IMG/VR virus record: IMGVR_UViG_3300023179_000009 | Coordinates: 62,001-126,000 of that record | DNA length: 64,000 bases | Strand: one strand, 5' to 3' | Part shown: positions 54,138 to 64,000 of the stretch, in pieces | How the letters are laid out: the number at the start of each line of letters is the position of its first letter | Position numbering within the stretch: the first letter of the stretch is position 1 | Position numbers and translations under genes: made by a program | The notes under the pieces: model-generated | What the model was told of the DNA's origin: nothing | Database searches by the model: none | Seen by the model: only the letters and a program-made list of their open reading frames with translations

Positions 54138-54674
54138 GTGAAAAATAAAAGATTTAGTCATAGTCTTAAACAAAAGTACGATTTGCTCGGTAAAAAATTA
54201 GCCGCTGAAATAATGCAAGACATTGTTAAGGCAAAGTTAATCACAGATAATCTTAAAGAAGATTCTGGCGACTTCACAGACGGTTTTTGGGACCAAAAAT
54301 ATCGTCTTCCCAGTGGCAAAGAATTAAAAGTTGAGCCAGAGATGAAAGATGAAAAGTGGTGGGGAAATCAATGGTCTTCTTCAAGGCCATTTCGATATGA
54401 AGACATGGATATTCCCTTTAGAAAAGCAAAAAATCAAGCACACCTTCACATCGTTATCAGTACTTGTGAGAATTTTGCTTTTTTACTTACTAGAGATGCC
54501 ATGAATGAAGCTCTTGAAGAATCTGGCGGAATGCCTAAGATTAAGAAAACAATTTATGAACCTAACGGTGCGGCCTACTTTAGCACCCCAGTAAATAAAG
54601 GTTATTTTGTTTACAGGAAAAAAGATGGTCGTTGGGCTAAGTGGAAAAAATTAGCAAAGGAATTAGTTAAATGA
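54138..54674 (+). CDS. Hypothetical protein
   Basis: 178 aa, SD AAGGAG. Confidence 0.65.
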   Translation: MKNKRFSHSLKQKYDLLGKKLAAEIMQDIVKAKLITDNLKEDSGDFTDGFWDQKYRLPSGKELKVEPEMKDEKWWGNQWSSSRPFRYEDMDIPFRKAKNQAHLHIVISTCENFAFLLTRDAMNEALEESGGMPKIKKTIYEPNGAAYFSTPVNKGYFVYRKKDGRWAKWKKLAKELVK

Positions 54675-55753
54675 GGATACAAAATGAGATTTGTTTAGAC
54701 TATTCAGATGTTTTGATTTGTCCAAAAAGAAGCGAGTCTCCGAGTAGAAAAAATGTAATTTTAAAAAGAAAATTTACATTTTTGAACTCAAAACAAACTT
54801 GGGAAGGTGTTCCTTTGGTGGCAGCAAACATGTCAACCATAGGCACGTTTGCGATGGCTAAAGTGTTTAATAAACATGGCATGAAGGTTTGTTTACACAA
54901 ACACTACACAGTTGAGCAATTAGTTGATTTTTTTAAAGACAATCAAGCTTTTTACACACTTGGCATTAAAGATTTTGATTTTGAAAAATTAAATCATTTT
55001 GTAAATCAGCATGGTCAGCCTCCTAAGTATATTTGCTTAGATGTTGCAAACGGTTATACAAAGTTTTTTGTTGAAAAATGCAGACAAATCAGAGATAATT
55101 TTCCAGAATCGGTTTTGATGGCCGGAAATGTTTGCACTCCAGAAATGGTTCAAGAACTTCTTCTTTCTGGTGGCGTGGATATTGTTAAAATTGGTATTGG
55201 CGGCGGGTCTGCATGCACCACAAGATTGGTAGCCGGTGTGGGAGTACCCCAATTCACGGCTGTGACAGAATGTGCGGATGCCGCACATGGATTAAGAGGT
55301 CACATTGTGGCCGATGGTGGTTGCGTAACATCTGGTGATGTGGCGAAGGCATTTGGTGGTGGTGCTGATTTTGTGATGCTTGGCGGCATGTTAAGCGGAC
55401 ACGAAGAGTGCGAAGGAGATTGGGAATACGAGTGGAAAACACAATCGGGTTTTTTTCAACCAATAGATCCTGGGTACCCTACCGAAAAGAAAAAGAAGAC
55501 TTTGCTTTTTTATGGCATGAGCAGCAAAGAAGCCATGGAAAAGTTTAATGGAGGTCAATCTGGCTATCGAGCTAGTGAAGGAAGATCAGTTCGTGTACCC
55601 TATAGAGGATTTGTGGAAGATACTCTTCTTGAAATAATGGGTGGAGTTCGAAGTGCTTGCACTTATGTCGGGACAGAGAGTTTGAAAGATTTTAGTAAGT
55701 GTTGTACATTTGTTCGAGTCAACAACACCCACAACAAGGTTTTTGAAAAATGA
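54671..55753 (+). CDS. guaC: GMP reductase
   Basis: LDYSDVLI, DVANGY, KIGIGGGSACTTR, ADGG, RSACTYVG; no CBS domains. Confidence 0.93.
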   Translation: MRIQNEICLDYSDVLICPKRSESPSRKNVILKRKFTFLNSKQTWEGVPLVAANMSTIGTFAMAKVFNKHGMKVCLHKHYTVEQLVDFFKDNQAFYTLGIKDFDFEKLNHFVNQHGQPPKYICLDVANGYTKFFVEKCRQIRDNFPESVLMAGNVCTPEMVQELLLSGGVDIVKIGIGGGSACTTRLVAGVGVPQFTAVTECADAAHGLRGHIVADGGCVTSGDVAKAFGGGADFVMLGGMLSGHEECEGDWEYEWKTQSGFFQPIDPGYPTEKKKKTLLFYGMSSKEAMEKFNGGQSGYRASEGRSVRVPYRGFVEDTLLEIMGGVRSACTYVGTESLKDFSKCCTFVRVNNTHNKVFEK

Positions 55754-56215: not shown

Positions 56216-59043
56216 TTGGAAACTACAGGATACGAAAACCTTCATAGACATAGCGATTTTAGCCTCAAAATTTAGGGGCCTTAATGACGAAAGTCATTAA
56301 GCAAACTGGATGAATTCGGGGAAGCCCTAACGTAAAGACGAGGGTAATCCCGAGCCAAGCATGTAATGCATTACATGAAGGTGTAGAGACTACTGGCGAG
56401 GTTTAGCCCTCTTAATTACCAGCAAGAGCGTCCAGCACCCCTAGGGGTGATGATATAGTCCACTCCACAAGAAACTGTGGGCAAAAGTGCTTAGACGGGT
56501 TTGCAAAAGTATCTGAATATGCCGAGTATCAAAAGCAAATAAATCAAAAGTATTTGTGTATCACCGATCATGGTGTGATGGGGGCTATTCCACAACAAGT
56601 TGCAGAATCTGAAAAACATAATTTATATCCTTTGTTTGGATGTGAACTTTATGTTAATCCGATGCAACCAAAAGTTTCTTCACGATCAGAGTCGGCGGAG
56701 TTTCGTAAATCTTTAGAAGATGAAGCAACGCAAAAAAAGTTTGATAAATCTTATCATTTATTGGCCATAGCCTACAATGATGAGGGTTATTCTAATCTTG
56801 TTCGTTTAACTTCTTGGGGCTGGATACACGGCTTCTATAGAAAGCCTAGGGTAAATCATGAAGCACTCATGAAATATAAAGAAGGAATTGTGTTCACCTC
56901 CGCCTGTGCCAACTCAGAAATAGCAAGAGCTTTTTTTGATGGTGGCGACGAGGCTGGCTTCGCCATGTTGGAAAAATATATGGCTATGTTTGGTGAGCAT
57001 TTTTATCTTGAACTTATGATGCTCGATTTTAAAGATCAAAAGCCTTATGATGCTTTTTTAATTCGTGCTCATGATAAGTATCATGTTCCGCTGACAATGA
57101 GCACCGATTGTTTTGTTAAAGGCACTTTGGTTCTAACTAATTTTGGTTTCAAAAATATCGAAGAAATTAAAGTTGGCGATAAGGTTTTTACTCATAAAAA
57201 CAGGTGGAGGTTAGTTGAACATGTTGGATCACGTTCACTAAGATCAAATGAAAAAATTTACCGTGTATCAACTAGTGCTGGTACATTTGCTTATGAAGCT
57301 ACGGGCAATCACGAAGTATATGTGGCCACTTATGAAAAAAATAAATGGAACTTTGATTGGGTAAGAACAGACGGATTGAAATCAAAAGAACACCACCTCA
57401 CAGTTCCTAAGATAAGTGAATCTAAAGTTTTCTCCGAAAAGGATTTAAGCGAAATAGATATTTTGTCCTTCTTGAAAAAAGAAGATTTTCAAGAAGGAAC
57501 AGACTACAAATCATCCAGAAAAGGCAACATGGGTTGCCGCCTTCAGTTCAACAGGGACACTCAAGAATTTTGGTCTTATCGTGGTTGGGATAGAAAATTT
57601 AGAACCACTATTCCCAGAATGTTAAAGGTAGATGATGATTTTGTTAAAATGTTGGGATGGTATATCGCTGAAGGTTGGAGTGAAAAAAATAGCAATCAGG
57701 TGGGTTTTGCTTTTCACATAGAAGAAAAACATGTAGCTGAGTGGTTAATTTCTTATTTTTCACGTTTTGATATTATTGCAAAGATTTATAAGGTCTCTGA
57801 GAACGGTATAGCAATTCGTTTTTCTTCAGTTGTCTTTAATCGTCTTTTGGGTCAAATGTGTGGTTTTGGTGCTAAAAACAAACATCTACCGAAGCCCAAC
57901 AATCAAGTTTGGCTAAAGATGTGGTCGAAAAGACAACTTTCTATGATTATTCGTGAGTATTGGCGTGGCGATGGGGGCAACGCTGCAAATAATGATGGTT
58001 TTATTTTCACATCCACATCTAAAATTTTAATACAAGAGATCGCTTTTGTTTTTAATTCTTGTGGTGTTTTTTCTTTACCTTGTGAAGAAAAAAATAGAAA
58101 AGATACATGGAATACCAAAAAATATATATCCTACACGGGAGGAAGAGGCGATCAAGTGTTGTCTTTTTTAACGAATGGAGATTGTAAGCCTTTTTTGCAC
58201 AAGGAAGTAATTGAATTTAAAGATTATTATTTGGTGCCAATCAAAGAAATCACTGCTCTTAAACACCAAGAACAAGAAGTTCACTGTTTTCAGGTAAAGG
58301 ACGATCATTCGTTCACTGCTAATCTTTACGCTGTGAGTAACTGCCACTACTGTCTTAAAGAGCAAAGTCATAATCAACGTCTTATGCTCATGCAGCAAAA
58401 CAAAAGAACGCTTGCTGAGATGGAGGCACTTGTAGAATCCGGCCAAGCAGAGGATCTATTTGAACTACAAGACACAAATCTATGGCTGAAGAGTGAGGAT
58501 GAACTAAATGAAATGTGGGAAGAAAAATTTCAAGATGTTATCGATTATGAACTTTTCAAACAATCCAAAGCAAACACAGTCAAGATTGCAGAGTTTGCCA
58601 AAGGCGTACAAATCAATAAAGAAATAAAACTTCCTAAAATAAATGACGCAGATGCACTTTTGTGGGAAGAAATCAAAAAAGGTTTTATGAAGCGTGGTTG
58701 TCCTAGAACTCCTGTTTATATAAAGCGAATCCGTGAAGAATACGATCTAATTTCAGAGAAGGGCTTTTCTAGTTACTTTTTAATTCAAAAAATGATGGTG
58801 GATGAAGCTCGAAGGAAGAGTCCAGAGATATTAGGTTTTGGAGACGGATCAGAAGCCGTTGGTCCTGGTAGAGGTTCGGTTGCTGGCTCTTTGGTTGCCT
58901 ATTGTCTTCGTCTTCATGATGTGGAGCCAATATTCCACGATTTGAGATTTAGTCGTTTTCTAAGTCCAGCACGTGGTGGCAAGCAAATGAAAATTCGCCA
59001 CACAATAGACCCAATATCTCATGAATCAATCAATTTGGATTAA
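56216..59043 (+). CDS. dnaE: DNA polymerase III alpha, N-terminal part only (PHP plus start of palm); exons 56216-56265 and 56490-59043; contains intein
   Basis: TTG start after AGGAGA; spliced HRHSDFSLLDG, TDHG, GCE, STD|CHY, GPGRGSVAGSLVAY, RFSRFLSPAR then stop. Confidence 0.9.
56266..56489 (+). ncRNA. Group I intron (224 nt, no ORF) in dnaE
   Basis: P GAATTCGGGGAA, Q AATCCCGAGC, R GTAGAGACTA (56383), S GATATAGTCC (56452); U.G in P1, terminal G; removal restores the frame. Confidence 0.92.
57109..58341 (+). mobile_element. Intein with LAGLIDADG endonuclease (411 aa) in DnaE PHP domain
   Basis: CFVKGTLVLT...VGDKV, ATGNHEV, MLGWYIAEG, REYWRGDG, ...AVSN|C. Confidence 0.93.
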
Positions 59044-59936
59044 TATCTGTTCATCATTCTTCGCATATATGATTTCATCAATGCTTTTTGCAAATTGTGA
59101 ACAGCGGGATGATCTTTAAACATTTCGGGATTCATTTCGGGCATTTGGTCATCTTTTTCCATTGAGGCTTCCATGTCCTCATCTTCCATGCCTTCCATGT
59201 CCTCATCTTCCATGCCTTCCATGTCCTCATCTCCCATGCCTTCCATGTCCTCATCTTCCATGCCTTCCATGTCCTCATCTTCCATGCCTTCCATGTCCTC
59301 ATCTTCCATGCCTTCCATGTCCTCATCTCCCATGCCTTCCATGTCCTCATCTTCCATGCCTTCCATGTCCTCATCTTCTTCATCGTGATCAACTTGGTCA
59401 TCATCATGATCTTCTTGGCTTAGTTGATTGTGAAAAGGAGCGGCAACTTCTTCGTTCATGGCTCTTGCCAACTTGTTACACATGTCTGGTCCGTATGATT
59501 CGTGGGCCATAACCTCAGAGATGTGTTTGTAGGTTTCACGGTGATTCAAACACTCTGCCACAAGACAGCCTAGTAAACCACTCTGTTTTAGGTTTCTTAC
59601 TAAAGTTTCAATAATAACAGGGTTTTTAGAAGAGGCTTTTGTTACTTTTGATAAAAGAGCAGACTCCTCAACAGTAGGCAATTTGACAGATTTTTTTTCA
59701 TTATTTGCTTCTTGAGTTTTTGGCTCATAAACCAACTCGTCATCGCCTTCGCCTGCTAATCCTTTTGATGAATTTTTTTTACCCTTGGTTGTTTTAGCAA
59801 CATAAGGAGATTTGCCACCTTCTGGGCGATCAGGTGAGGTTGATGGGTCCACATTATCTCCATCGTTGCATACCTTGGGCTTGTCTTGTAATTTTCCTTT
59901 AGAATCCAAGTATTCATCAAATTTCATAAAAGCCAT
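59040..59936 (-). CDS. Acidic repeat protein, capsid-targeting-like N-terminus
   Basis: MAFMKFDEYLD; EDEDMEGM repeats; SD GAGG. Confidence 0.75.
   Translation of the reverse strand: MAFMKFDEYLDSKGKLQDKPKVCNDGDNVDPSTSPDRPEGGKSPYVAKTTKGKKNSSKGLAGEGDDELVYEPKTQEANNEKKSVKLPTVEESALLSKVTKASSKNPVIIETLVRNLKQSGLLGCLVAECLNHRETYKHISEVMAHESYGPDMCNKLARAMNEEVAAPFHNQLSQEDHDDDQVDHDEEDEDMEGMEDEDMEGMGDEDMEGMEDEDMEGMEDEDMEGMEDEDMEGMGDEDMEGMEDEDMEGMEDEDMEASMEKDDQMPEMNPEMFKDHPAVHNLQKALMKSYMRRMMNRY
59169..59378 (-). repeat. 24-bp coding tandem repeat, 8.75 units
   Basis: EDEDMEGM units; GDEDMEGM variant at units 3 and 7. Confidence 0.95.
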
Positions 59937-59943
59937 TTTTTCC

Positions 59944-60117
59944 TCACTCTACTGGCATGATAATTGCCAAAACTAAATAAATTATTATTGGTAATCCGAA
60001 ACCCAAAAGTGTACTTGCTGCAAAAATTAATCTTACTATAGAGGCGTCTAAACCAAGATAATTACCCAGCCCAGAACAAACTCCAAAAATTAGTTTATTT
60101 TTAAGATCTCTTTTCAT
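59944..60117 (-). CDS. pspC: PspC-domain membrane protein, 57 aa (not in ORF track)
   Basis: MKRDLKNKLIFGVCSGLGNYLGLDASIVRLIF...GLPIIIYLVLAIIMPVE; SD AGGTG. Confidence 0.85.
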   Translation of the reverse strand: MKRDLKNKLIFGVCSGLGNYLGLDASIVRLIFAASTLLGFGLPIIIYLVLAIIMPVE

Positions 60118-60174
60118 AAAACACCTTTTGTGTTATTATTTAGTAGTTTAATTGTTTTTTTGAGGAGAATATTT

Positions 60175-60786
60175 TTGGATCAAAAAAAAGATTTAAATTG
60201 GGAAACTGCTTCTTTGGATATGGAGCAAAAAAATTACCGAGGAGAAACTGGCAAATCTCGTAATAGAAGATTAAAAGAAAACTGGTTTGAAAAGTTTGCT
60301 CCTGAAAACCAAACAGGTATTGATATTGGTTGTAACGATGATCCTTTAAATGAAACTTTTCGACGTTATGATGTGATTTTCGGAGATGGAGATGCCACTA
60401 ATATGGTGGGTGTTCCAGACAACGTCTTTCATACCGTGTATGCAAGTCATGTTTTGGAACATCTTCAATTTCCCCAAAAAGCAATACGCAGGTGGTATCA
60501 AATTTTAAAACCTGGAGGCCACTTGATAATCGTTGTTCCCCACCGTGATTTGTATGAAAAAAAACGATTTCCTCCAAGCAATTGGAATCCAGAACACAAA
60601 TATTTTTGGCTACCAGAAGACGAAGACCCGCCAGCAACAAAAAATTTGAAAAAAGAAGTTCTTTTGGCAATACCAAATGCTAACATAGTCCAGTTTAGGG
60701 TTTTAGATGACGGTTATGATTATTCTCTTGAAAACAACGAACACGCTATAGGAGAATTTTCGATAGAGTGTATTGTAAAAAAATAA
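60175..60786 (+). CDS. Class I SAM-dependent methyltransferase
   Basis: GIDIGC, GDAT, YASHVLEH, LKPGGHL; TTG start after GAGGAG. Confidence 0.85.
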   Translation: MDQKKDLNWETASLDMEQKNYRGETGKSRNRRLKENWFEKFAPENQTGIDIGCNDDPLNETFRRYDVIFGDGDATNMVGVPDNVFHTVYASHVLEHLQFPQKAIRRWYQILKPGGHLIIVVPHRDLYEKKRFPPSNWNPEHKYFWLPEDEDPPATKNLKKEVLLAIPNANIVQFRVLDDGYDYSLENNEHAIGEFSIECIVKK

Positions 60787-60788
60787 TT

Positions 60789-60816
60789 TTTACTTTCTGC
60801 CTTTTAGGTGTATAAT
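60789..60816 (+). promoter_or_regulatory. tmRNA promoter TTTACT-N16-TATAAT
   Basis: -10 box ends 9 nt before tmRNA G1. Confidence 0.65.
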
Positions 60817-60825
60817 TACTGAGTT

Positions 60826-61417
60826 GGGGTCGTAAAGGTATCGATTGGATAACGAGAGACTCAATGGCAAGTCGAGGTTGGTCAATGGCCTCGTTAAAAA
60901 TTGACCAAAGCCTTAACTGGCAAAAATAGTTACGCAATGGCTGCTTGATAAAAAGAGCAACCACGGACTGCGAATGCGAGCGGGTAGCATTCAAAAGTTC
61001 GTTGTCAAATCCCGCTGGACTAGTGCGGTCAACTTGCGTCTAGTCGAGAAAATAGGTTGAAAAGTCCGTCAGGAATCCTGTTCGTTGGAGTCTCGGCGGT
61101 CTGATAAAAAACGAAACAAACTTGTAGAGGTTGTTTTTCAAATTATCGCAAGACAGGGGTTCAGGTCGAGCCGTCAATAAATGAAAGTTTATTGATTATG
61201 ATTGGATGAATTCGGTGAAACCTTAACGAGTAAAGTCGAAGGCAATACCGAGCCAAGCCCAAGATACATCTTGGGAAGGTGTAGAGACTACTAGAGGAAT
61301 AAAGTTTCCTTAATAACTAGCATGAGCGTCCAACGCCTAAAACCGCAAGGTTATGGTGAACATATAGTCCATTAACTAAGAAATTAGTTGGGGAAATATC
61401 GACTCCCCTCGACTCCA
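60826..61417 (+). ncRNA. ssrA: tmRNA, intron-containing; tag (A)GKNSYAMAA
   Basis: Acceptor stem GGGGUCG/CGACUCC-A with G3.U70; TTAACT then ORF 60919-60948 and tandem stops; spliced T-arm AGGGG-UUCGACU-CCCCU. Confidence 0.93.
61161..61398 (+). ncRNA. Group I intron (238 nt, no ORF) in tmRNA T-loop
   Basis: P GAATTCGGTGAA, Q AATACCGAGC, R GTAGAGACTA (61281), S CATATAGTCC (61361); guide GGUCGA-GCC pairs both exons. Confidence 0.9.
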
Positions 61418-61420
61418 CTA

Positions 61421-61452
61421 AAAAGAGAGGAAGAAATTCCTCTCTTTTTTTT
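61421..61452. terminator. Bidirectional terminator after tmRNA
   Basis: AAAAGAGAGGAA-GAAA-TTCCTCTCTTTT. Confidence 0.85.
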
Positions 61453-61974: not shown

Positions 61975-64000
61975 ATGTCGAAGCCAGCGAAAACATTGCT
62001 GAACAATTATTTTAAAATAAAAACAGAATACAATAAAATGCCAAAAACTTTACAGGGAATTGATGATTTAGGAGATTATGATAATACTTCTATTTCAACA
62101 TATGTACATTGGACAACAGATGATTATAGGGTTTTTGTTCCTGCTGCGCCCACTATTAAAAGTTTAATACCGGGCGTTTATGAAATGCACAAGAGCGATA
62201 ACATTGGTTTATATTTTGAAAAAATACCAGTACGTTCAGAAGGTCTCCTAAGATTCCCTGACACCAATTCAGAGCGTGTTGTAAAAGAGATTCAAAAATT
62301 TTGGGAAAGAGAAGATGTTTTTGAATCGTATAGTTTAACGTATAAGCGGGGAATCCTGCTATACGGCCCCCCAGGTTGCCATGCCAAGGGAACGAAAATT
62401 TTGATGTACAACGGCGATCTTAAAAAAGTTGAAGACATAGTTGTCGGTGACGAGGTTATGGGACCAGACAGTCGGCCTAGGCGTGTTTTGGAACTTATAA
62501 GAGGCCAAGATCAAATGTATAAAATTACTCCAAATCGTGGCGAACCTTTTGTTGTGAACGGTCATCACATTTTGAGTTTACAAAGAAGCAGCAAAAGAGA
62601 CTGCGCAACGCCAGAAATATTAAATATTTCTTTAAATAATTACAAAAAATTATCTAAGCCATCTCAAGTCAAATATAAATTACGTCGTTGTGCTGTAGAT
62701 TTTTCGAATCTATCAAATGAAGTAATCGTAGATCCTTATTTTTTAGGTGTTTGGTTAGGAGACGGCTCAGAGAATAAAACCGAAATCAACACCGCTGATA
62801 AAGAGATAAAAGATTATTTATATCAAATAGCAAGTAGTTATAATCTACACGTAACAGAGAGAAGGAAAACGGATTCTATTTGTTGCAGTTATACACTCTC
62901 TAGTAATGGAGGCATTGGCGAAAATGGCTTGCGTAATGATTTGAAAAAAATCGGGGTATTTAATTCAAAACACATTCCAAATGAATATTTTGTGGCTTCA
63001 AGAGAAGTCCGCTTGCAACTTCTAGCAGGGATAATTGACACAGACGGTGGTTATTCAACGGCTTCTTGGAGGAAGAATCAAAAATTTAAAAATAAAGGCT
63101 ATAAAGGTTATTTTGAAATAATTCAAAAGAGGGTCGATCTATCCAATCAAATTGTAAAATTGGCAAGAAGTCTTGGATTTGGAGTTACTATTCGTAGTTG
63201 TAAAAAAACAATTAAAAAAACCGGGTTTGTAGGAGAATATCAAAGAATTAGTATTTTTGGAGACATTTCCATTATTCCTACAAAAATTCTTAGAAAGAAT
63301 GCTCTTAAAGGTCGTGCAAATAAAGACCCACTTCGCACGGGAATATCTTTAATAGAATCTTTGGGCTTTGGTGATTTTTATGGCTTCACGCTGTCGGGAG
63401 ATCATCTATACCTCACAGATGATTTTATTGTTCACCACAACTCTGGTAAATCGTGTACAATTCAATTAATTATGGAAGATGTGGTGAACAGAGAAGGAAT
63501 TGTCATAAAGTTCACAGATCCTTTTTTGTTTACCCAAGGCATGCGAGTTCTTAGACAGATACAAGAAGATACACCTGTGGTTGTCATAATTGAAGATATA
63601 GATTCTTTTTTAGAAATTTATAACGAATCTGAGATACTAAATGTTTTAGACGGAGTAAACGAAGTCAATAAAGTTGTTTTTTTGGCTACCACTAATTACC
63701 CAGAAAAACTCGGAGCAAGAATAGTAAACAGACCCAGTCGTTTCGATAAAAGGTTTAGAATAGGTTACCCTTCAAAGACTTCAAGAAGAATGTATTTCGA
63801 ACACTTGATTGGCGAAGGAGATGAAAATAAACTTAAACAAAAAATATCAGATTTAAATTTGGATTTGGATCGCTGGGTCGAAGACACAGACGAGATGTCG
63901 GTTGCCCATCTCAAGGAGTTGTTTATACAAGTTGTTATTATAGGTGACACTTATGAAGAATCAATAGAAACTTTAAAAAGTATGAAAGAAAACCTTGAAG
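61975..64000 (+). CDS. AAA+ ATPase with intein (3'-truncated; not in ORF track)
   Basis: GILLYGPPG|SGKS, IIEDID, LNVLDG, ATTNYPE, NRPSRFD; frame open to window end. Confidence 0.9.
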   Translation, partial: MSKPAKTLLNNYFKIKTEYNKMPKTLQGIDDLGDYDNTSISTYVHWTTDDYRVFVPAAPTIKSLIPGVYEMHKSDNIGLYFEKIPVRSEGLLRFPDTNSERVVKEIQKFWEREDVFESYSLTYKRGILLYGPPGCHAKGTKILMYNGDLKKVEDIVVGDEVMGPDSRPRRVLELIRGQDQMYKITPNRGEPFVVNGHHILSLQRSSKRDCATPEILNISLNNYKKLSKPSQVKYKLRRCAVDFSNLSNEVIVDPYFLGVWLGDGSENKTEINTADKEIKDYLYQIASSYNLHVTERRKTDSICCSYTLSSNGGIGENGLRNDLKKIGVFNSKHIPNEYFVASREVRLQLLAGIIDTDGGYSTASWRKNQKFKNKGYKGYFEIIQKRVDLSNQIVKLARSLGFGVTIRSCKKTIKKTGFVGEYQRISIFGDISIIPTKILRKNALKGRANKDPLRTGISLIESLGFGDFYGFTLSGDHLYLTDDFIVHHNSGKSCTIQLIMEDVVNREGIVIKFTDPFLFTQGMRVLRQIQEDTPVVVIIEDIDSFLEIYNESEILNVLDGVNEVNKVVFLATTNYPEKLGARIVNRPSRFDKRFRIGYPSKTSRRMYFEHLIGEGDENKLKQKISDLNLDLDRWVEDTDEMSVAHLKELFIQVVIIGDTYEESIETLKSMKENLE
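62377..63441 (+). mobile_element. Intein with LAGLIDADG endonuclease (355 aa) in Walker A
   Basis: CHAKGTKILM, VVNGHH, YFLGVWLGDG, LLAGIIDTDG, ...IVHHN|S. Confidence 0.95.

What the first reader, a model, noticed from the sequence alone, without database searches (positions are those of the whole stretch)
56266..61398. Two sibling, endonuclease-free group I introns with compensatory changes, in an mRNA and in a tmRNA 5 kb apart
Seen: cores align almost base for base with covariation: P3 CTGGATG/CGTCCAG vs TTGGATG/CGTCCAA, P4 TTCGGG/CCCGAG vs TTCGGT/ACCGAG, P5 CCCT/AGGG vs CCTT/AAGG, P7.1 CTGG/CCAG vs CTAG/CTAG, while P1/P10 guides fit their own exons. Extra helices between P7 and P3 suggest subgroup IA (established trait of phage introns). 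Inference: both are under selection to splice, and one lineage has moved to unrelated targets without a homing ORF (reverse splicing or an endonuclease in trans).
Basis: partly seen in the sequence, partly recalled or inferred. Interest (0 to 1): 0.65.

Follow-up and report, generated by a model that had tools for sequence, protein, structure and literature searches.

The report
Two ORF-less introns in huge phage
A 459-kb lake phage carries two small, endonuclease-free self-splicing introns, one in its DNA polymerase gene and one in its tmRNA gene; both are real and come and go among related phages, but they are cousins rather than siblings, and the tmRNA intron ends in A where the textbook rule requires G.

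Summary
Rfam calls group I introns at 56256-56481 and 61151-61390, and a tmRNA at 60834-61168. Intron-less alleles in related phages fix the boundaries at 56266-56489 (A, in split dnaE) and 61161-61398 (B, in the tmRNA T-loop). Of 51 modelled base pairs compared between A and B, 34 are identical, 16 changed on both sides and none is broken. Neither intron holds an ORF.

A and B are about 65% identical and belong to a large family of compact, ORF-less phage introns. B's nearest kin are introns at the same T-loop site in other phage contigs (72-81% identical). A's nearest is its orthologue in a divergent phage: 91% identical, against flanks of 69-74%. That points to recent lateral spread, not a jump from one gene to the other within this genome.

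Splicing itself is inferred, because no RNA data were found. No endonuclease gene lies beside either intron.

The parts
56216..56265 (+). dnaE-N exon 1 (TTG start after an AGGAG ribosome-binding site; ends in U56265, the -1 U of the 5' splice site)
   Evidence: Translation gives ...NLHRHSDFS. Intron-less homologues read ...HRHSDFSLLDGF....
56266..56489 (+). Intron A, a 224-nt ORF-less group I intron. P1 56262-66/56275-79; P2 56280-88/56293-301; P3; P4; P5; P6a 56360-77; P7 56386-92/56456-61; P7.1/P7.1a 56393-56422; P8 56436-49; P9 56465-80; P9.0 plus terminal G 56487-89.
   Evidence: Rfam 98.4 bits; own model 242.5 bits; fold z = -4.7; boundaries fixed by intron-less dnaE alleles L064, L065 and L069.
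56490..59043 (+). dnaE-N exon 2 (PHP domain and the start of the pol III alpha domain), interrupted at protein level by a 411-aa LAGLIDADG intein (57109-58341)
   Evidence: Pfam PHP, DNA_pol3_alpha, Hint_2 and LAGLIDADG_3. An intein-less DNA allele skips 1233 nt in run X10.
60826..61160 (+). tmRNA exon 1: acceptor 5' strand GGGGTCG, tag reading frame ending ...NSYAMAA plus two stops, pseudoknots, T-stem 5' strand, and the first T-loop U
   Evidence: Rfam tmRNA 82.7 bits. The intron-less orthologue L061 scores 139.9 bits, and ARAGORN reads its tag as GKNSYAMAA**.
61161..61398 (+). Intron B, a 238-nt ORF-less group I intron at T-loop subsite 2. P1 61158-62/61168-72 (U61160 pairs with G61170); P10 guide 61164-69; P2 61174-82/61187-95; P3; P4; P5; P6a 61258-75; P7 61284-90/61365-70; P7.1/P7.1a 61291-61320; P8 61334-58; P9 61373-89; GGGG 61390-93; P9.0 AU 61396-97 with J7/9 AU 61371-72; terminal A61398.
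   Evidence: Rfam 65.5 bits; own model 269 bits; fold z = -3.9. A DNA contig in run X10 joins 61160 to 61399, skipping exactly 238 nt, and the intron-less allele L061 confirms this.
61399..61417 (+). tmRNA exon 2: T-loop remainder UCGACU (the P10 partner), T-stem 3' strand, acceptor 3' strand CGACTCC, and discriminator A. CCA is not encoded.
   Evidence: Alignment with the intron-less allele. The G3-U70 pair and the 7-bp acceptor stem were read directly from the sequence.
61425..61444 (+). Terminator-like hairpin followed by a T run, directly after the tmRNA
   Evidence: Read from the sequence.

Best explanation
The window lies in a 459-kb huge phage from lake water. It carries two independent members of a widespread family of compact (about 200-240 nt), ORF-less group I introns of subgroup IA type. 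Intron A (56266-56489) interrupts the N-terminal piece of a split dnaE gene, inside the PHP motif HxHSDFS|LLDG. Intron B (61161-61398) interrupts the tmRNA gene between the first and second nucleotide of the T-loop.

Inferred mechanism: each is removed from its transcript by guanosine-initiated self-splicing. P1 selects the U before the 5' splice site, and P9.0 plus P10 select the 3' splice site. Splicing restores the dnaE reading frame and a canonical T-arm (AGGGG-UUCGACU-CCCCU).

Shown here: both introns are dispensable and sporadic at DNA level among related phages. A has recently moved between phages that are otherwise only about 70-74% identical.

Inferred: spread is by DNA-level homing or recombination during mixed infection. 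Any double-strand break would be supplied in trans, either by a free-standing nuclease elsewhere in a phage genome or by the neighbouring intein endonucleases. A and B are cousins within the family, not products of a jump within this genome.

B belongs to a tmRNA-specific lineage whose members mostly end in A instead of the canonical G. I infer that they still ligate exons, helped by a 2-bp P9.0 and a 6-bp P10.
For: - Identity as group I introns and tmRNA.
- Exact boundaries from intron-less alleles: B, (joint 61160 to 61399, 238 nt skipped; L061); A, (L064, L065, L069).
- Selection on the fold: 16 double changes and 0 broken pairs between A and B; family-wide 94.9% paired cells with 40 of 46 pairs covarying; compensatory changes also within B variants (P2, P7.1) and within A orthologues (P6a, P9).
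- Family size and ORF-less state: 52 hits of 113-257 nt (some cut off by contig ends) in 46 IMG/VR loci.
- Cousins, not siblings: A-B identity 65%, ranks 22 and 29 of 51; B is 81%, 75% and 72% identical to L071, L070 and L028, which sit at the same T-loop site.
- Lateral spread of A: the intron is 91% identical in L067, against dnaE exon 74%, IMPDH 71%, orf123 69%, and a tmRNA that BLAST cannot align.
- Presence/absence of B between contigs 98-99% identical (L061 vs L062).
- All six more distant relatives have intron-less tmRNA, and only one has A.
- Terminal A: no placement of the 238-nt insert ends in G. The same A is present in an independent study's assembly (X2), in variants L057, L060 and L062, and in L028, L070 and L076.
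- P9.0 covaries: AU/AU in B, L028 and L076; AC/GU in L070 and in A.
- Precedent for exon ligation without a terminal G: hexacoral ND5-717 (PMC6545197).
Against: - There is no RNA evidence of splicing for either intron. The one metatranscriptome laid on the region (X23) did not cover the locus.
- The P7 guanosine-binding pair is unchanged in B (GAGACUA/UAGUCC), so nothing in the sequence explains how a terminal A would be accommodated.
- The phylogeny is poorly resolved. An A+B clade is not rejected (AU p = 0.22-0.33), and neither is monophyly of the tmRNA introns demonstrated.
- No nuclease gene was found next to either intron, so the DNA-level mobility mechanism is an inference.
- The higher conservation of A relative to its flanks could partly reflect constraint on the ribozyme.
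Confidence: 0.75

Rival explanations
1. One reading: A and B are true siblings, and one copy transposed within this genome from dnaE to tmRNA (or the reverse) by reverse splicing, without any endonuclease.
For: They share the same architecture and nearly identical cores in J3/4-P4-P6-P7. By tree path length, A's nearest non-orthologous relatives include the tmRNA introns (0.44-0.50). The AU test does not reject an A+B clade (p = 0.22).
Against: A-B identity is only about 65% and ranks mid-table among 51 relatives. B has closer kin (72-81%) at the very same T-loop site in other phage contigs, and A has a 91% orthologue at the same dnaE site in a divergent phage. Each intron is therefore older at its own site than a jump within this genome would allow. 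No reverse transcriptase was looked for or seen in the window.
Confidence: 0.1
2. Intron B is defective in the second splicing step. The terminal G-to-A change blocks exon ligation, so the phage tmRNA gene in intron-bearing lineages is dead, or yields only cleaved products.
For: A terminal G is near-universal, and all 883 bacterial tmRNA introns obey the rule (PMC11915505). The G-binding pair in P7 is unchanged. There is no RNA evidence. Variants L060 and L062 carry a 1-nt insertion in the P7 5' strand.
Against: The terminal A is kept in four lineages that are 72-75% identical to each other, with fully compensatory changes in P2, P3, P6a and P7.1a. P9.0 covaries in register with the terminal A. 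The tmRNA exons (acceptor stem, T-arm, tag frame) stay intact and 94-100% conserved in intron-bearing genomes. The phage is found with this allele in assemblies from several studies. ND5-717 introns without a terminal G ligate exons in vivo.
Confidence: 0.15
3. The introns spread passively by ordinary homologous recombination between co-infecting phages, with no site-specific nuclease involved at all.
For: No endonuclease ORF lies in or beside either intron. Both target sites are among the most conserved stretches of their genes (the PHP motif and the T-loop), which offers flanking homology. Only 4.1% of tmRNA introns carry a homing endonuclease gene.
Against: A has crossed between phages whose flanks are only about 70-74% identical, which is poor substrate for unassisted recombination. 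The genome encodes at least five HNH ORFs and one GIY-YIG ORF elsewhere, and two LAGLIDADG inteins lie within about 0.6-1 kb of the introns.
Confidence: 0.3

Closest known systems
[quoted passage not shown]
   Same: Intron B is a group I intron with a P7.1 region inside the T-loop. It has a -1 U paired with G in P1, is mostly ORF-less like 96% of known cases, and splicing would rebuild the T-loop.
   Different: The host is a huge phage, not a bacterium. The subsite is loop position 2, reported there only for Anaerolineae plus one Myxococcota, whereas the main site is 7. The stated boundary rule (terminal G) cannot be met: B and three sister lineages end in A.
Phage group I introns of subgroup IA in DNA-metabolism genes (T4 td, nrdB and sunY; SPO1-type DNA polymerase introns), reviewed in PMC3984707
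   Same: Intron A is a small IA-type self-splicing intron in a highly conserved motif of a replication gene of a phage, with sporadic distribution among relatives.
   Different: The host gene is a split pol III alpha (dnaE) with an intein 620 nt downstream. There is no intron ORF. Sub-subgroup (IA1, IA2 or IA3) was not determined here.
Collaborative or trans homing of ORF-less introns by free-standing endonucleases (cyanophage S-PM2 psbA intron with F-CphI; T4 mobE with the nrdB intron), PMC3984707, PMC2790892, PMC6083498
   Same: ORF-less introns that nevertheless show presence/absence polymorphism and lateral spread among related phages.
   Different: In those systems the nuclease gene lies next to the intron-bearing gene. 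Here no HNH or GIY-YIG gene lies in the 64-kb window, and the variable ORF beside the tmRNA has no nuclease signature.
Hexacoral mitochondrial ND5-717 group I intron lacking the terminal G (PMC6545197)
   Same: A natural group I intron without the 3'-terminal G that is nevertheless maintained. For ND5-717, perfectly ligated exons were observed in vivo.
   Different: ND5-717 is a giant, vertically inherited organellar intron that probably depends on host factors. B is a 238-nt mobile phage intron with a standard compact core, and its splicing is untested.

Membership tests
Group I intron (Rfam RF00028) | Covariance-model score above the curated gathering threshold (50 bits) | tested here: met
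   A 98.4 bits, B 65.5 bits.
Group I intron (Rfam RF00028) | Conserved core helices P3-P8 with the P7 guanosine-binding helix, supported by covariation | tested here: met
   51 of 51 modelled pairs are standard in both introns, with 16 double changes. Family-wide, 94.9% of cells are paired and 0 of 500 shuffles reach this.
Group I intron (Rfam RF00028) | 5' splice site after a U that pairs with G in P1 | tested here: met
   U56265 pairs with G56276 (A) and U61160 pairs with G61170 (B). The boundaries agree with intron-less alleles.
Group I intron (Rfam RF00028) | 3'-terminal nucleotide is G | tested here: not met
   Met for A (G56489). Not met for B: the three possible placements of the 238-nt insert end in A, U or C, and with the -1 U it ends in A61398.
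Group I intron (Rfam RF00028) | Guanosine-dependent self-splicing with exon ligation | not testable with these tools
   No RNA run covers the locus. This needs an in vitro assay or junction reads.
Subgroup IA | Extra paired element(s) P7.1/P7.2 between P7 and the 3' strand of P3 | tested here: met
   A 4+4 bp hairpin at 56393-56422 and a 4+5 bp hairpin at 61291-61320, with 4 compensatory changes. Assignment to IA1, IA2 or IA3 was not made.
Intron-form tmRNA gene (PMC11915505) | Group I intron inside the T-psi-C loop whose removal rebuilds a 7-nt T-loop | tested here: met
   The intron-less orthologue L061 reads AGGGG-TTCGACT-CCCCT. The insert sits after loop nucleotide 1.
Intron-form tmRNA gene (PMC11915505) | Boundaries obey -1 U (or C) and a terminal G | tested here: not met
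   The -1 U is met. The terminal nucleotide is A in B, L028, L070 and L076, and G only in L071.
tmRNA (RF00023) | tRNA-Ala-like acceptor with G3-U70, a T-arm, and a tag reading frame with stop | tested here: met
   Rfam 82.7 bits for exon 1 alone. Acceptor GGGGTCG/CGACTCC with a G-U at pair 3. The tag ends in ...NSYAMAA plus two stops, and ARAGORN calls the intron-less orthologue.
Mobile group I intron with its own homing endonuclease | Endonuclease ORF inside the intron | tested here: not met
   No ORF of 40 aa or more lies within 56266-56489 or 61161-61398. The introns are only 224 and 238 nt long.
Collaborative homing (ORF-less intron plus adjacent free-standing endonuclease) | Free-standing nuclease gene next to the intron-bearing gene that cuts the intron-less site | tested here: inconclusive
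   Neighbouring ORFs have no nuclease domain. HNH and GIY-YIG genes exist only 90 kb or more away. LAGLIDADG domains occur only inside the two nearby inteins. Cleavage specificity cannot be tested here.

The most novel reading that the evidence does not exclude
A lineage of compact phage group I introns in the tmRNA T-loop has replaced the near-universal 3'-terminal guanosine with adenosine. It keeps an ordinary guanosine-binding P7, yet still ligates exons accurately, with the 3' splice site fixed by P9.0 and a long P10. This would be the first small, probably self-splicing, natural system in which to ask how the second step can proceed without the terminal G.
Probability: 0.5. Interest if true: 0.75.

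Novelty: new variant of a known kind. Interest (0 to 1): 0.6.

Why it matters
Group I introns in phage replication genes and in tmRNA T-loops are both established, so the basic finding is ordinary.

Three things go beyond it.

1. The data give clean natural evidence that ORF-less introns are still moving. Precise intron-plus and intron-minus alleles exist in contigs 98-99% identical. One intron is 91% identical across phages whose neighbouring genes are about 70% identical. This bears on the old question of how endonuclease-free introns spread.

2. The tmRNA intron form extends to huge phages, and to a T-loop subsite so far seen only in two bacterial groups.

3. Four lineages end in A instead of G, with the rest of the ribozyme under clear structural selection. 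If they splice, a 238-nt RNA offers a tractable model for 3' splice-site recognition without the terminal G, which is otherwise known only from giant coral mitochondrial introns.

For annotation, interrupted phage tmRNAs are missed by ARAGORN, and boundary rules that insist on a terminal G would mis-place this intron.

Tried and rejected
- ARAGORN on the window finds no tmRNA, because the intron interrupts the T-loop. It does call the intron-less orthologue.
- BLAST of both loci against 50,697 phage records found only short core matches to other introns. There was no related tmRNA or dnaE locus.
- The search for related loci with the neighbouring methyltransferase found one distant IMG/VR locus and, in JGI metagenomes, only the source contig itself. 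Relatives were reached through protein clusters and the look-up of encoding contigs instead.
- RNA evidence: no RNA run holds the locus. The metatranscriptome X23 matched only conserved cores of other introns.
- Phylogeny: two ML trees are largely star-like. Neither an A+B clade nor a tmRNA-intron clade is recovered or rejected.
- The variable 298/323-aa ORF next to the tmRNA in L057, L060 and L061 was tested as a candidate free-standing endonuclease. It has no Pfam or PHROG hit and no nuclease motif seen.
- Pattern scans also returned GC-rich chance matches (L072, L073-L075, L077-L079) that the covariance model rejects.
- The supplement of PMC11915505 held here contains no sequences, so B could not be compared with the bacterial subsite-2 and subsite-3 introns.
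- An alternative 3' splice site after G61393 was considered and rejected. It would leave 5, 4 or 2 extra T-loop nucleotides in different lineages, and it contradicts the intron-less allele.
- A switched nucleoside pocket (A-U in place of the G-C pair in P7) was considered and rejected, because P7 is unchanged.
Exons were analysed separately by reference, and junctions were judged against natural intron-less alleles.

Full report
**What is there**

The window is bases 62001-126000 of a 458,813-bp virus record, judged 91% complete. The same phage turns up in lake and freshwater metagenomes from nine studies.

Rfam finds three things above its curated thresholds:
- a group I intron at 56256-56481 (98.4 bits);
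- a tmRNA at 60834-61168 (82.7 bits), whose match stops in the T-arm;
- a second group I intron at 61151-61390 (65.5 bits).

ARAGORN sees no tmRNA, because the gene is interrupted. Both introns fold far better than shuffled controls (z = -4.7 and -3.9). Neither contains an ORF of 40 codons or more.

**Host genes and exact boundaries**

Intron A lies 50 nt into a gene that starts at TTG 56216, behind an AGGAG site.
- Exon 1 encodes ...NLHRHSDFS and exon 2 continues LDGFAKVSEY....
- This is the PHP-domain motif of pol III alpha. Pfam finds PHP, DNA_pol3_alpha and a Hint/LAGLIDADG intein in exon 2.
- Relatives L064, L065 and L069 carry uninterrupted genes reading ...HRHSDFSLLDGF.... This fixes A at 56266-56489, with -1 U56265 and terminal G56489.

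Intron B lies in the tmRNA T-loop.
- A DNA contig of a related strain in run X10 joins 61160 directly to 61399, skipping exactly 238 nt.
- A fetched contig, L061, shows the same intron-less allele. Its canonical T-arm is AGGGG-TTCGACT-CCCCT, Rfam scores it 139.9 bits, and ARAGORN reads the tag GKNSYAMAA**.
- B is therefore 61161-61398.
- The same X10 strain keeps intron A but lacks the 1233-nt intein, so these are DNA alleles and not spliced RNA.

I did not build or search any joined exon sequence. Junctions were judged against natural intron-less alleles.

Every quoted helix and every quoted compensatory change is correct. In a 51-pair model (P3, P4, P5, P5a, P6, P6a, P7, P7.1, P7.1a, P8, P9), A and B share 34 identical pairs. 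They differ by double compensatory changes at 16 pairs, by one A-U to G-U change, and have no broken pair.

P1 and P10 fit each intron's own exons:
- A: GCCU|C pairs with GGGGC, and P10 is weak.
- B: GGU|UC pairs with GAGCC, and a 6-bp P10 forms between GGUCGA (61164-69) and UCGACU (61399-404).

The hairpin between P7 and the 3' strand of P3 (P7.1/P7.1a) is the subgroup IA hallmark. I did not try to assign IA1, IA2 or IA3.

**Are they siblings?**

A covariance model built from A and B finds only four introns in the whole genome:
- A and B;
- D, inside a tRNA (77 bits);
- C, beside an HNH gene (26-55 bits with my model; 70 bits with Rfam).

An 18-nt core word shared by A and B occurs in 46 IMG/VR loci. 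The model aligns 52 introns there, 113-257 nt long (some cut off by contig ends), all ORF-less. They sit in tRNA-Leu-like anticodon loops, in tmRNA and in protein genes. Family-wide, 94.9% of cells pair and 40 of 46 pairs show double changes.

Within this family, A and B are only about 65% identical. Each ranks 22nd or 29th of 51 among the other's relatives. ML trees are star-like. A+B is not recovered, but the AU test does not reject it (p = 0.33 and 0.22).

The more telling evidence is positional.
- Introns at exactly the same T-loop site occur in L028, which Rfam also calls as a tmRNA, and in L070, L076 and L071.
- L071 is filed as a "Neisseriaceae" MAG scaffold, but it carries a split dnaE-C with an intein next to the tmRNA. 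It looks like a mis-binned relative of this phage clade.
- B is 81%, 75% and 72% identical to L071, L070 and L028.

So B belongs to a tmRNA-specific lineage, and A has its own orthologue in another phage's dnaE. They are cousins.

**Mobility**

The gene order dnaE-N ... PspC, methyltransferase, tmRNA ... AAA ATPase, dnaE-C is conserved in a clade of large phage contigs.

Among close relatives (methyltransferase about 90% or more identical):
- B is present in L057-L060 and L062;
- B is absent from L061, which is 98.6-99% identical to L062 in its flanks.

Among six more distant relatives (methyltransferase 71-78% identical), all tmRNA genes are intron-less, and only L067 has A.

The L067 copy of A is 91% identical to the window's copy, with compensatory changes in P6a and P9. 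By contrast, the adjoining dnaE exon is 74% identical, IMPDH 71% and orf123 69%. The two tmRNAs cannot be aligned by BLAST. This is the signature of a recent lateral transfer of an ORF-less intron.

The mechanism is not shown.
- No HNH or GIY-YIG gene lies in the window.
- The genome has at least five HNH ORFs and one GIY-YIG ORF, all 90 kb or more away. One of the HNH ORFs abuts intron C.
- The only nearby endonuclease domains are inside inteins: one in dnaE-N, 620 nt downstream of A, and one in the AAA ATPase, about 1 kb downstream of B. The inteins are not strictly linked to the introns.
- A variable ORF beside the tmRNA in some relatives has no recognisable nuclease domain.

**The unexpected point: B does not end in G**

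The 238-nt insert can be placed in three registers, because TC occurs at both ends. Its last base is then A, U or C, and never G. With the U-G pair of P1, it ends in A61398.

This is not an assembly error. The base is the same in an independent study's assembly (X2). It is also the same in three diverged variants (L057, L060, L062) and in three other lineages (L028, L070, L076). Only L071 has G at that position.

The two bases before the terminal A pair with J7/9 exactly as P9.0 does in canonical introns. The pairing is AU/AU in B, L028 and L076. In L070 it is AC/GU, the same pairing intron A uses before its terminal G. That amounts to one compensatory event.

The lineages ending in A that I checked in full (B, L028, L070) have a 6-bp P10, whereas L071, which ends in G, has 5 bp and a 1-bp P9.0. 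L076's P10 was not examined.

The P7 guanosine-binding pair is unchanged, so a switched nucleoside pocket is not the explanation. Between these lineages, P2, P3, P6a and P7.1a differ by fully compensatory changes, so the ribozyme has stayed under structural selection with the terminal A in place.

The tmRNA database paper states that all 883 bacterial tmRNA introns obey the terminal-G rule. It reports subsite 2 only in Anaerolineae and one Myxococcota (PMC11915505). A natural precedent for exon ligation without the terminal G exists in coral mitochondria (PMC6545197). I therefore think accurate splicing is more likely than not, but it is untested.

**Verdict**

The feature is real and the structural description is accurate. 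Selection to splice is a sound inference. The claim of siblings moving between the two targets is not supported.

The basic kinds are known: phage IA introns, and intron-form tmRNA. The new elements are:
- the huge-phage host;
- the direct population evidence for spread of ORF-less introns;
- the tmRNA intron lineage that ends in A.

Noticed in passing
window 56216-59043, and beyond 64000 (L057 9760-12519): dnaE is a split gene. The N-terminal piece (PHP plus the start of the pol III alpha domain) ends at 59043. The C-terminal piece (alpha, finger, HHH) lies about 5 kb downstream, after the tmRNA and an AAA ATPase. The split is conserved in all relatives fetched.
   Followed up: partly
window 57109-58341: A 411-aa LAGLIDADG intein (Cys...Asn|Cys) sits in dnaE-N. 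A precise intein-less DNA allele exists in run X10, which still keeps intron A.
   Followed up: partly
window 61975-63999 (runs off the window): The AAA ATPase is interrupted by a Hom_end/Hint intein. Relatives L057, L060, L061 and L062 have the 341-aa intein-less form. This 8-kb stretch therefore holds four self-splicing insertions (two introns and two inteins).
   Followed up: partly
L004 about 1513-1716 (genome about 333.9 kb): A third family member (intron D; 77 bits with my model, 40.9 bits with Rfam, below the gathering threshold) sits inside a tRNA gene. By eye it is tRNA-Gln(UUG), split between nucleotides 34 and 35. tRNA-Asn and tRNA-Lys follow it.
   Followed up: partly
L002 1082-1765 (genome about 318.4-319.1 kb): A fourth intron (C; Rfam 70 bits, with a large P5 extension) is abutted and partly overlapped by a 188-aa HNH_3 endonuclease ORF. 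Its host gene was not identified. A second HNH lies about 1.3 kb further on.
   Followed up: partly
L057 7277-8248, L060 2112-3008, L061 1868-2764, L062 2100-2500: A variable cassette lies directly after the tmRNA terminator. Some relatives have a 298/323-aa ORF with no Pfam or PHROG match, L062 has about 400 nt of non-coding DNA, and the window has nothing.
   Followed up: partly
window 61390-61393 with 61405-61408: All six tmRNA T-loop intron lineages keep a GGGG (UGGG in L057) four to five bases before the 3' splice site. It is complementary to the CCCC T-stem strand of exon 2. It may act as a surrogate partner while P1 and P10 occupy the T-arm. No covariation test is possible, because the stem is invariant.
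   Followed up: no
L076 13098-13310 (minus strand): A tmRNA T-loop intron that lacks the P9 hairpin altogether and still ends in ...AAUA before UCGACU.
   Followed up: partly
L060 and L062, aligned to window 61288-61289: These intron B variants carry a 1-nt insertion in the 5' strand of P7 (GAGACUUAC) and another just after the 5' splice site. This is either tolerated variation or early decay.
   Followed up: no
window 59040-59936 (minus strand): A 298-aa acidic protein contains about ten tandem copies of an 8-residue MEGMEDED-like repeat. Repeat length varies between strains (266-298 aa).
   Followed up: no
L071 (RXKI01000036.1, 'MAG: Neisseriaceae bacterium'): This 11-kb scaffold has an intron-bearing tmRNA followed by a split dnaE-C with an intein and a LAGLIDADG ORF, like the huge-phage clade. 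It is probably a phage contig mis-binned into a bacterial MAG.
   Followed up: partly
window 54671-55753: The phage encodes an IMPDH/GMP-reductase family enzyme just upstream of dnaE-N. It is conserved in relatives.
   Followed up: no
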